Shown piece by piece: positions 31,034 through 31,466 of a stretch of DNA of 64,000 nt. This DNA is from Heteronotia binoei (Eukaryota): the NCBI RefSeq assembly GCF_032191835.1, contig NC_083223.1, forward strand, positions 245,520,001 to 245,584,000. Direction: 5' to 3'. The position numbers were made by a program, and so were the translations under genes. Numbering within the stretch: the stretch's first letter is position 1; each line of letters starts with the position of its first letter. Under the pieces are notes generated by a model. It was not told where the DNA came from and did not search any database. It saw only the letters and a list, made by a program, of their open reading frames with translations.

Positions 31034-31132
31034 CCCCTGACATAGATGTCTGACATCTTCTCGCCCGTCATGAAAGCATCATCTTCCAGGACCACCTCAT
31101 CGGTGTTCCAAATAATTACCCGCAGCTCATAC
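31034..31132 (-). CDS. OTOF: OTOF C2F exon copy B, 99 nt, [33 protein letters not shown] (candidate mutually exclusive alternative)
   Basis: ggctag|G ... GG|gtaatt; same length and phase as copy A; 25 of 32 amino acids identical; no stops. Confidence 0.88.
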
Positions 31133-31367
31133 CTAGCCGCCAGCATGGCGCGGACAGAGGCACACAACAGCAACAAAAACAACACACAGAACAAAAGAAG
31201 GGGGCAGAATAGAAAAGCAAAGTGTCCATTACTGACAGCCACAAGGAAAAGGAGACACTCTGTCCATGAGAAGCCCACCCTCTGCAAGGAGCACGGAGCC
31301 AGGCGGCCACACCACCACAAGAAGCTCACACACAGATAAGCTGGCCGGCTGGGTGAGCCGTACATAC

Positions 31368-31466
31368 CCCCGGACAAAAATGTCACTGGATTTCTCGCCA
31401 GTGAAGTAATCATCGTCCTCCAGGATTACCTCATCAGTGTTCCACACTATCACTCTAAGCTCGTAT
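31368..31466 (-). CDS. OTOF: OTOF C2F exon copy A, 99 nt, [33 protein letters not shown] (canonical type)
   Basis: cctcgccag|A ... GG|gtatgt; phase 2 to 2. Confidence 0.96.

What the first reader, a model, noticed from the sequence alone, without database searches (positions are those of the whole stretch)
31034..31466. Tandem homologous OTOF C2F exons: a probable mutually exclusive switch of the C2F acidic loop
Seen: two 99-nt exons, both phase 2-2 with AG/GT boundaries, 235 nt apart, encoding the same C2F segment. Copy A reads ...[17 protein letters not shown] and copy B reads ...[17 protein letters not shown]. Of 32 codons, 25 give identical residues, and 14 of those 25 use different codons. 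That pattern indicates an old duplication with both copies under purifying selection, not a fresh or dead copy. Known: this segment holds loop 1 of otoferlin C2F, whose aspartates are implicated in Ca2+/lipid sensing. Copy A matches the mammalian sequence, while GEKMSDIYV in copy B resembles the dysferlin-type motif as I recall it. Inference: exon choice yields two otoferlins with different C2F charge (D to A, S to M) and possibly different Ca2+/phospholipid behaviour, for example auditory versus vestibular or brain. I know of no description of this in mammals but cannot check annotations.
Basis: partly seen in the sequence, partly recalled or inferred. Interest (0 to 1): 0.92.

Follow-up and report, generated by a model that had tools for sequence, protein, structure and literature searches.

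The report
Ancient alternative exon pair in otoferlin
This lizard (probably gecko) otoferlin gene carries two intact, interchangeable versions of the exon that builds the calcium- and membrane-binding loop of its last C2 domain; the pair is real and over 400 million years old, is absent from the one mammal locus examined, and is already in automatic gene annotations though in no paper I could find.

Summary
Two 99-nt, same-phase, AG/GT-bounded exons lie 235 nt apart on the minus strand. They share 25 of 32 residues, and 14 of those use different codons.

Both encode the first strand, loop 1 and second strand of otoferlin's last C2 domain (C2F, now called C2G).

Copy B is not a relic:
- It is intact, next to copy A, in two other lizard loci, cod, two other teleosts and one unidentified fish.
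- Gecko-to-teleost dN/dS is 0.03-0.05 with dS about 1.
- RefSeq and Ensembl already list equal-length A-only and B-only isoforms that differ only here. Examples are the gecko Paroedura picta (X1/X3, same peptides as the window), Anolis, Hemicordylus, a frog and several fish. B-only models also exist for a salamander and a sea turtle.

Copy B is the ancestral type, close to insect otoferlin and to dysferlin. Copy A is the derived type that mammals keep. A mammal locus has only a 138-nt intron and no B. Two bird-like loci carry dead B copies.

The three loop-1 Ca2+ ligands are kept in both copies. The differences fall at the membrane-inserting tip and one neighbouring aspartate.

Read-level RNA proof for this genome could not be obtained. 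The scan had not noted this before. The biology is real, but novelty is modest.

The parts
35528..35616 (-). Upstream constitutive OTOF exon (89 nt, ...[29 protein letters not shown] + AA). Its donor must choose between exon A and exon B.
   Evidence: Sequence read. tblastn of Paroedura picta otoferlin covers 35619..35527.
31368..31466 (-). Exon A. This is the derived ('mammalian-type') version of strand 1, loop 1 and strand 2 of the last C2 domain (LEDDDYF...SSDIFVR). It has a strong polypyrimidine acceptor and a GTATGT donor.
   Evidence: It is 30/32 identical to mouse otoferlin 9qe2 residues 1563-1594 of the construct. It is identical to the A exon of P. picta isoform X1.
31133..31367 (-). 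Intron between A and B (235 nt). The 3' 97 nt (31135..31231) contain no AG and form a pyrimidine/GU-rich tract, so the branch point of exon B is predicted to lie about 95-100 nt or more upstream of the acceptor. The whole intron is unusually conserved among lizards.
   Evidence: AG-exclusion analysis. Mean column identity is 90% over the whole aligned A-intron-B region (exons included) between this window, a second gecko-like locus (L012) and another lizard (L013).
31034..31132 (-). Exon B. This is the ancestral-type version of the same segment (LEDDAFM...MSDIYVR). It has a CTAG acceptor with a purine-rich proximal tract and a GTAATT donor.
   Evidence: It is 27/32 identical to mouse otoferlin, and closer to dysferlin/myoferlin than A is. 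It is identical to the B exon of P. picta isoform X3, Gekko kuhli and Phrynosoma models. It has intact orthologues in fish and lizards.
27307..27548 (-). Downstream constitutive exon (242 nt, [11 protein letters not shown]...SADDFLG). It carries loop 2, loop 3 and the loop-3 Ca2+ ligands of the same C2 domain.
   Evidence: tblastn identity is 100% over 82 aa.

Best explanation
The two exons are an ancient tandem duplication inside the otoferlin gene of a squamate, most likely a gecko. They serve as alternative, interchangeable exons. The mRNA takes A or B and yields two full-length otoferlins of equal length that differ at 7 residues.

[quoted passage not shown] This is the domain that binds three Ca2+ ions and dips its top loops into the target membrane.

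Both versions keep the loop-1 Ca2+ ligands (E1742, D1743, D1754 in mouse numbering). They differ as follows:
- at the hydrophobic tip that faces the membrane (Y-F in A, F-M in B);
- in one neighbouring acidic residue (D1745 in A, Ala in B);
- at three further positions (V/I1732, S/M1752, F/Y1756), where B has the residue found in dysferlin, myoferlin and insect otoferlin.

Shown:
- the anatomy of the pair;
- deep conservation of both copies under purifying selection;
- that B is the ancestral type and A the derived one;
- that annotation pipelines already model A-only and B-only isoforms in a gecko, other lizards, a frog and fish, with B-only models in a turtle and a salamander.

Inferred:
- that this particular genome expresses both forms;
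- that exon A, with the better acceptor, is the default, and that exon B, with a weak proximal acceptor behind a long conserved pyrimidine/GU tract and a distant branch point, is the regulated, cell-type-specific choice;
- that the swap tunes membrane insertion or lipid preference of the last C2 domain rather than Ca2+ coordination itself.
For: - Anatomy and coding symmetry.
- Placement on the solved structure. Ligand and membrane-contact residues come from PMC12526402.
- Tandem A-B pairs with intact AG/GT: a second gecko-like locus L012 and another lizard L013/L014, cod L008-10, teleosts L004 and L007, and an unidentified fish L001-3.
- Selection: dN/dS of B between gecko and teleosts is 0.03-0.05 at dS about 1.0-1.3, the same range as A.
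- RefSeq pairs of equal length that differ only in this exon: P. picta X1 vs X3 (7 residues, peptides identical to the window's), Anolis sagrei X4 vs X3, Hemicordylus X2 vs X3 and Ascaphus X3 vs X2. B-only models also exist in Anolis carolinensis (X9), Pleurodeles and Chelonia mydas.
- Ensembl pairs from one gene in Myripristis and Scophthalmus differ, in that region, only in the exon and the junction codon.
- Where B is not needed it decays or vanishes. Two bird-like loci have a 7-nt deletion plus donor GT>AT, and an acceptor AG>AT plus non-conservative changes. A mammal locus has a 138-nt intron and no B.
- The A-B intron is conserved across lizards. It carries a 97-nt AG-free tract before B, which is 174-237 nt in fish.
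Against: - There is no read-level RNA evidence for this genome.
- Database isoforms are automatic models. I could not inspect the RNA-seq support behind them.
- RefSeq/GenBank fish models often include A and B in tandem (26 of 108 proteins). Three ab initio lizard models do the same (Phrynosoma, Gekko kuhli, Lerista).
- Both-skipped models exist (A. sagrei X8, Hemicordylus X10, Ascaphus X11).
- Nothing in the gecko sequence forces exclusivity. The exon length is divisible by 3, both introns are ordinary GT-AG, the predicted branch point is about 135 nt or more from the A donor, and the region has no unusual RNA structure (z = +0.58).
- No functional difference between the two loops has been measured by anyone.
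Confidence: 0.8

Rival explanations
1. Exon B is a conserved-looking but unused pseudo-exon in this species, and the B-only database isoforms are homology-driven annotation artefacts.
For: No RNA reads could be laid. Its acceptor has a poor proximal pyrimidine tract. Bird-like loci show that the copy can die while remaining recognisable.
Against: - B has the same amino-acid sequence in this window, Paroedura, Gekko kuhli and Phrynosoma.
- dN/dS to teleosts is 0.03-0.05 while dS is near saturation.
- Splice sites are intact in every lizard and fish locus examined.
- The flanking intron is conserved.
- B-only models cannot arise by projecting mammalian proteins, which are all A type.
- Genuinely unused copies (bird-like L005, L006) show frameshift and splice-site loss.
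Confidence: 0.06
2. Both exons are normally included together, giving an otoferlin with a 33-residue internal repeat, as in many RefSeq fish models.
For: There are 26 fish RefSeq/GenBank models and 3 ab initio lizard models with A and B in tandem. Inclusion of both keeps the frame. In the gecko the A-B intron looks spliceable.
Against: - It would duplicate strand 1, loop 1 and strand 2 inside an eight-stranded C2 sandwich.
- No tetrapod RefSeq isoform examined has it, while A-only and B-only pairs are modelled.
- Ensembl models of the same fish genes are A-only or B-only.
- In fish the best branch-point motif for B lies only 46-82 nt from the A donor. That is at or near the roughly 50-nt steric limit described for other exclusive pairs (PMC7969005).
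- Ab initio predictors favour any in-frame exon with good coding potential.
Confidence: 0.05
3. A and B are two independently regulated cassette exons rather than a coordinated either/or pair, so that skipping both or including both are regular outcomes.
For: Both-skipped RefSeq models exist in three tetrapods and in Podarcis lilfordi. No enforcing mechanism was found in the gecko.
Against: Skipping both removes a core strand pair and two of the domain's Ca2+ ligand positions, so that product is unlikely to be functional. The strong joint conservation of equal length and phase over more than 400 My fits substitution, not independent inclusion.
Confidence: 0.09

Closest known systems
The homologous alternative 3' exons of OTOF that encode the transmembrane tail (human exons 47/48)
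   Same: They are in the same gene and of the same kind: a tandem-duplicated pair of homologous exons used as substitutes and conserved to fish. They are described as a tandem-exon-duplication-derived substitution with pathogenic variants in both exons (PMC8373072). Both versions are present in this window at 21402..21199 and about 19800..19618.
   Different: That pair consists of terminal exons carrying their own stop codons and is retained in mammals. The pair studied here is internal, lies in the last C2 domain, is absent from the mammal locus examined, and is not mentioned in that paper or any other I could search.
OGDH exons 4a/4b (Ca2+-insensitive versus Ca2+-sensitive isoforms)
   Same: It is an ancient vertebrate tandem pair that swaps a Ca2+-related segment. 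The intervening intron is short and size-restricted, with a very long pyrimidine tract, a long AG-exclusion zone and a distant branch point close to the upstream donor (PMC7969005). The fish OTOF A-B introns look the same: AG-free for 174-237 nt, with a TTAAT/TTAAC motif 46-82 nt from the A donor.
   Different: In the gecko the AG-free zone is only 97 nt and the predicted branch point is about 135 nt or more from the donor, above the steric limit. No branch points have been mapped for OTOF.
Classical mutually exclusive homologous exons of excitable-cell and synaptic proteins (SNAP25 5a/5b, CACNA1C 8/8a, SCN 5a/5b, alpha-tropomyosin 2/3)
   Same: They have equal length and phase, differ by a handful of residues in a functional surface, show deep conservation of both copies, and have conserved flanking introns. 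This comparison rests on my own knowledge and on the reviews found.
   Different: For those pairs, tissue or developmental switching and functional differences have been measured. For this OTOF pair nothing has.
Dysferlin/myoferlin C2G and insect otoferlin-like proteins
   Same: Exon B shares the ...[10 protein letters not shown][KR] motif and Ile at the strand-1 position with them. This marks B as the ancestral state.
   Different: Those genes have a single version of the segment. Only vertebrate otoferlin carries the added derived copy A.

Membership tests
Otoferlin (type II ferlin) gene | Exons encode otoferlin-specific sequence in the order of the protein, including the last C2 domain and the C-terminal transmembrane tail | tested here: met
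   tblastn of squamate otoferlins finds 14-16 collinear exons on the minus strand, with 0.94-0.96 core identity to gecko proteins. The best PDB hit of both exon peptides is otoferlin.
Tandem-duplicated homologous exon substitution (mutually exclusive exons) | Adjacent exons of identical length and phase with clear sequence homology | tested here: met
   99 nt each, 1+96+2, 235 nt apart, 25/32 aa and 70/99 nt identical.
Tandem-duplicated homologous exon substitution (mutually exclusive exons) | Both copies have usable splice sites and an open frame | tested here: met
   AG and GT at both exons, with one open frame each. The same holds in the other lizard and fish loci.
Tandem-duplicated homologous exon substitution (mutually exclusive exons) | Both copies conserved under purifying selection across distant species | tested here: met
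   dN/dS is 0.03-0.05 for B and 0.02-0.03 for A between gecko and teleosts. B-type exons are present in lizards, turtle, frog, salamander, bichir, eel and teleosts.
Tandem-duplicated homologous exon substitution (mutually exclusive exons) | Mature transcripts contain one copy or the other, not both and not neither | tested here: inconclusive
   Equal-length A-only/B-only RefSeq and Ensembl isoform pairs exist. Both-included fish models and both-skipped tetrapod models also exist. No reads could be laid on this genome.
Exclusivity by steric hindrance (distant branch point near the upstream donor) | Branch point of the downstream exon less than about 50 nt from the upstream exon's 5' splice site | tested here: not met
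   In the gecko the last internal AG is at +135 and the AG-free zone is 97 nt, so the predicted branch point is about 135 nt or more from the donor. Fish are borderline: the motif is at +46 in L001 and +77 to +82 in teleosts. These are predictions only, not mapped lariats.
Exclusivity by reading frame / nonsense-mediated decay | Exon length not divisible by 3, so that double inclusion or double skipping shifts the frame | tested here: not met
   99 nt equals 33 codons.
Exclusivity by U2/U12 spliceosome incompatibility | One of the flanking introns has U12-type splice signals | tested here: not met
   The donors are GTATGT and GTAATT and the acceptors are AG. There is no /[AG]TATCCTT donor motif.
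Exclusivity by competing RNA structures (docking/selector sites) | Stable, conserved base-pairing between intronic elements | tested here: inconclusive
   The minimum-free-energy fold of 31000-31500 is no more stable than shuffles (z = +0.58). Long-range pairing outside this stretch was not examined.

The most novel reading that the evidence does not exclude
Exon B preserves the ancestral ferlin loop 1, and exon A is a vertebrate invention. Hair cells or other otoferlin-expressing cells of fish, amphibians and non-avian reptiles would switch between them by cell type (for example vestibular or lateral-line versus auditory, or brain versus hair cell). The switch would set how deeply and on which lipids the last C2 domain engages the membrane. 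Mammals, and independently some birds, would have fixed the derived loop when they specialised their auditory synapses. If so, nature has already run a loop-1 swap experiment on the domain whose disruption abolishes exocytosis.
Probability: 0.2. Interest if true: 0.7.

Novelty: new member of a known kind. Interest (0 to 1): 0.45.

Why it matters
Otoferlin is the Ca2+ sensor of hair-cell synapses and a current gene-therapy target. Its last C2 domain is essential: the DDA knock-in abolishes exocytosis (PMC10751786).

A naturally alternative loop 1 has been kept for over 400 million years in fish, amphibians, turtles and lizards. It is missing from the mammal locus examined and from every mammalian protein model seen. 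This gives a ready-made pair of variants for asking what the tip of that loop does. It also warns that zebrafish otofa and other non-mammalian models may express a form that mammals do not have.

The pair is a second tandem-duplicated substitution in the same gene, besides the known transmembrane exon pair. The practical limits are that it is already present in automatic annotations and that no expression or functional data exist yet.

Tried and rejected
- **Sequencing runs.** Neither exon B nor the downstream exon had a holder on record as RNA. About 20 small runs from at least 11 coded organisms hold both exons. These look like target-capture DNA of relatives, which fits the very conserved intron. 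This reading is an inference.
- **Spliced B fragments.** A search for short spliced B fragments (63-201 aa) using Phrynosoma B plus the downstream exon found none from tetrapods. It returned only genomic fragments, insect otoferlins and other ferlins.
- **Structure.** AlphaFold2 of the B-type domain with a 25-sequence alignment gave mean pLDDT 51.6. That is too poor to use. It places strands at the two ends of the exon and a loop between, but I do not rely on it, and no fold search was run.
- **RNA structure.** Not supported as the cause of exclusivity (z = +0.58). An inverted-repeat scan was entered with the wrong strand and not repeated.
- **Failed look-up.** One contig look-up (P0004) was not sent because the service was busy.
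- **Wrong first guesses.** I first took the large '[16 protein letters not shown]' group for FER1L6. Named hits show that at least some members of it are insect otoferlin-like proteins (Timema, Phaedon), while rodent FER1L6 and FER1L4 have different loops. I first took L005/L006 for squamates. Their constitutive exons are closest to birds (0.93) and their introns do not align with the lizard's.
- **Hagfish.** The A-like and B-type proteins are only about 70% identical, so they are separate genes, not isoforms. They do not date the exon duplication.
- **Earlier scan notes.** The scan's earlier notes held nothing on this locus.

Full report
**Observation**

The gene lies on the minus strand. Exon A (31466..31368) and exon B (31132..31034) are each 99 nt. 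Each starts with one base that completes a codon, holds 32 codons, and ends with two bases. Each is preceded by AG and followed by GT, and they are 235 nt apart.

The peptides share 25 of 32 residues. Fourteen of those 25 use different codons, and 70 of 99 bases are identical. Only one frame is open in each copy.

The upstream exon (35616..35528) ends in AA. With the first base of A (A) or of B (G), the junction codon is Lys either way. The downstream exon begins at 27548.

**What the segment is**

Each peptode alone finds mouse otoferlin (PDB 9qe2) as its best solved relative. A matches at 30/32 (E = 1.6e-14) and B at 27/32 (E = 1.1e-11). B scores higher than A against dysferlin (33 vs 26 bits) and myoferlin (29 vs 24 bits).

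The cryo-EM paper (PMC12526402) gives the roles of residues in this domain:
- Loop 1 supplies three Ca2+ ligands: E1742, D1743 and D1754.
- F1746 and F1747 are among the aromatic residues that insert into or approach the membrane.

The motif LEDDDFF is L1741-F1747. The exon therefore encodes strand 1, loop 1 and strand 2 of the last C2 domain (C2F in the older numbering, C2G in that paper).

The three ligand positions are identical in A and B. The differences are V1732I, the I/V at 1739, D1745A, the tip pair (Y-F in A, F-M in B), S1752M and F1756Y. So the 'acidic loop switch' removes one neighbouring aspartate and remodels the hydrophobic tip. It does not change the coordinating residues.

**Whose genome**

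Squamate otoferlins map as 14-16 collinear exons on the minus strand. Core identity is highest to geckos: Paroedura picta 0.96, Gekko kuhli 0.95 and G. japonicus 0.945. For comparison, Podarcis gives 0.94, Anolis 0.94 and snakes 0.92. The window is squamate, most likely a gecko, but not P. picta itself.

**Copy B elsewhere**

A phmmer search with the 32 residues of B against 1.84 billion representatives returned many short ORF fragments. Their contigs gave genomic loci in which A and B sit side by side with intact AG and GT:

| Locus | Assignment | Basis |
|---|---|---|
| L012 | second gecko-like | |
| L013/L014 | another lizard | |
| L008-L010 | cod | 0.96 identity to Gadus otofa; |
| L004, L007 | two further teleosts | |
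| L001-L003 | unidentified fish-like species | |

Nei-Gojobori estimates for B between gecko and teleosts are dS 1.0-1.3 and dN 0.03-0.05, giving omega of 0.03-0.05. This is the same range as for A. A versus B within one species has saturated dS. The duplication therefore predates the split of ray-finned fish and tetrapods, and both copies have been under strong purifying selection since.

**Existing annotation**

In RefSeq, these isoform pairs have equal length and differ only inside this exon:
- P. picta X1 and X3, at exactly 7 positions, with both peptides identical to the window's
- Anolis sagrei X4/X3 and X2/X1
- Hemicordylus capensis X2/X3
- Ascaphus truei X3/X2

B-only models also exist for Anolis carolinensis (X9), Pleurodeles waltl and Chelonia mydas.

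In Ensembl, otofa of Myripristis and Scophthalmus has A-only and B-only proteins. In this region these differ only in the exon and the junction codon.

To my knowledge, NCBI's pipeline proposes extra isoforms only with transcript or RNA-seq support. I could not inspect that support for these models.

Databases also hold both-skipped models (A. sagrei X8, Hemicordylus X10, Ascaphus X11, Podarcis lilfordi). They hold A+B tandem models as well: 26 fish RefSeq/GenBank entries, and the ab initio lizard models of Phrynosoma, Gekko kuhli and Lerista.

**Direction of evolution and losses**

B is nearly identical to the corresponding segment of insect otoferlin-like proteins (Timema, Phaedon...[16 protein letters not shown]). 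It shares its diagnostic residues with dysferlin and myoferlin. B is therefore the ancestral state and A the derived copy.

- **Mammals.** Mammalian proteins are all A type. In a mammalian contig (L011) the intron after A is only about 138 nt, which leaves no room for B.
- **Teleost second paralogue.** Fragments carrying a different A-type loop (DDDIF), which I take to be the second teleost paralogue, also read straight through a roughly 90-nt intron.
- **Birds.** Two loci whose constitutive exons are closest to birds (0.93) carry dead copies of B. L005 has a 7-nt deletion and its donor changed from GT to AT. L006 has its acceptor changed from AG to AT and several non-conservative changes, with omega against intact B of about 0.25. 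A third related contig (L015) still has an intact B.

Decay where the exon is dispensable, against strict conservation elsewhere, argues that B is used in the lineages that keep it.

**How the choice might be made**

- Exon A has a classical pyrimidine-rich acceptor.
- Exon B has a purine-rich stretch just before its CTAG acceptor. Further upstream lies a 97-nt AG-free pyrimidine/GU-rich tract, which predicts a distant branch point.
- In fish the AG-free zone is 174-237 nt. A conserved TTAAT/TTAAC motif lies only 46-82 nt from the A donor. This resembles the OGDH 4a/4b arrangement, where branch points below about 50 nt from the donor enforce exclusivity (PMC7969005).
- In the gecko the predicted branch point is about 135 nt or more from the donor, so steric exclusion is not expected.
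- Frame (99 nt), U12 signals and local RNA structure (z = +0.58) do not enforce exclusivity either.
- The aligned region (both exons, the intron between them and their flanks) has a mean column identity of 90% between gecko-like loci and another lizard. That is the usual signature of regulated alternative exons.

My reading is that A is the default and B the regulated choice. This is an inference.

**What could not be done**

- No run on record as RNA held the exons.
- A structure prediction of the B-type domain was too uncertain to use (pLDDT 51.6).

Expression of B in this genome, tissue specificity and any functional difference therefore remain untested.

**Literature**

Five full-text searches found no paper describing this pair. 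PMC8373072 describes only the homologous 3' transmembrane exons of OTOF. Both of those are also present in this window. A sturgeon study reports otoferlin variants that differ near the N-terminus, not here.

**Verdict**

This is a real, ancient pair of tandem-duplicated alternative exons, a well-known kind of feature. It lies in a functionally critical loop of otoferlin. It is retained from fish to lizards and turtles, is absent from the mammal locus examined, and is decaying in some bird-like loci.

It is already captured by RefSeq and Ensembl isoform models, including in a gecko with identical peptides.

What appears to be undescribed in print is:
- its evolutionary history;
- the fact that the Ca2+ ligands are spared while the membrane-facing tip changes;
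- any functional role.

Interest is moderate.

Noticed in passing
window 21199-21402 (-) and 19618-19800 (-): Both versions of the known homologous alternative 3' exons of OTOF (the transmembrane tail) are present. One reads ...[14 protein letters not shown]... and the other ...[14 protein letters not shown]..., each ending in its own stop codon. RefSeq squamate isoforms combine either tail with either A or B.
   Followed up: partly
L005:937-1030 and L006:1299-1397 (bird-like contigs): Dead copies of exon B sit next to an intact exon A. L005 has a 7-nt deletion and its donor changed from GT to AT. L006 has its acceptor changed from AG to AT plus R>W, T>I, E>K and other changes. A related contig, L015, still has an intact B. 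This suggests recent, lineage-specific loss within birds or their close relatives.
   Followed up: partly
L011:488-625 (mammalian contig): The intron between the A-type exon and the next exon is only about 138 nt, so copy B has been deleted outright in this mammal. Fish fragments with a different A-type loop (DDDIF), probably the second teleost paralogue, likewise show a roughly 90-nt intron without B.
   Followed up: partly
window 30960-31520 versus L012 and L013: The A-B intron and the first ~70 nt after B are conserved between gecko-like loci and another lizard (mean column identity 90% over the whole aligned region, exons included). About 20 small sequencing runs from at least 11 coded organisms hold both exon B and the downstream exon. 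This looks like target-capture (ultraconserved-element type) data.
   Followed up: partly
proteins P0405-P0421, P0434-P0441, P0455-P0461, P0483 etc. (fish RefSeq/GenBank): Many fish otoferlin models (around 2040-2086 aa) include A and B in tandem, duplicating 33 residues inside a C2 domain. Ensembl models of fish otofa have one or the other. Either co-inclusion is real in fish or an annotation artefact is being propagated.
   Followed up: no
proteins P0241 versus P0184/P0187 (Eptatretus burgeri): Hagfish has two otoferlin-like genes about 70% identical to each other. One carries a B-type segment (DDAFM...MSDIYVR) and the other an A-like end (SSDIFVR) with a different loop (DDSLL). The two loop types may thus be older than jawed vertebrates, but here they sit in separate genes.
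   Followed up: no
window 26781-27119 (-): A 112-aa ORF (…[29 protein letters not shown]…) lies in the intron just downstream of the 27548 exon. It looks like the tail of a LINE (CR1-like) ORF2, judged from memory of that motif.
   Followed up: no
window 39950-40090 (+): A simple repeat encoding (KEGR)n, that is (GAAGGAAG)n-like, lies in an OTOF intron. It is trivial.
   Followed up: no
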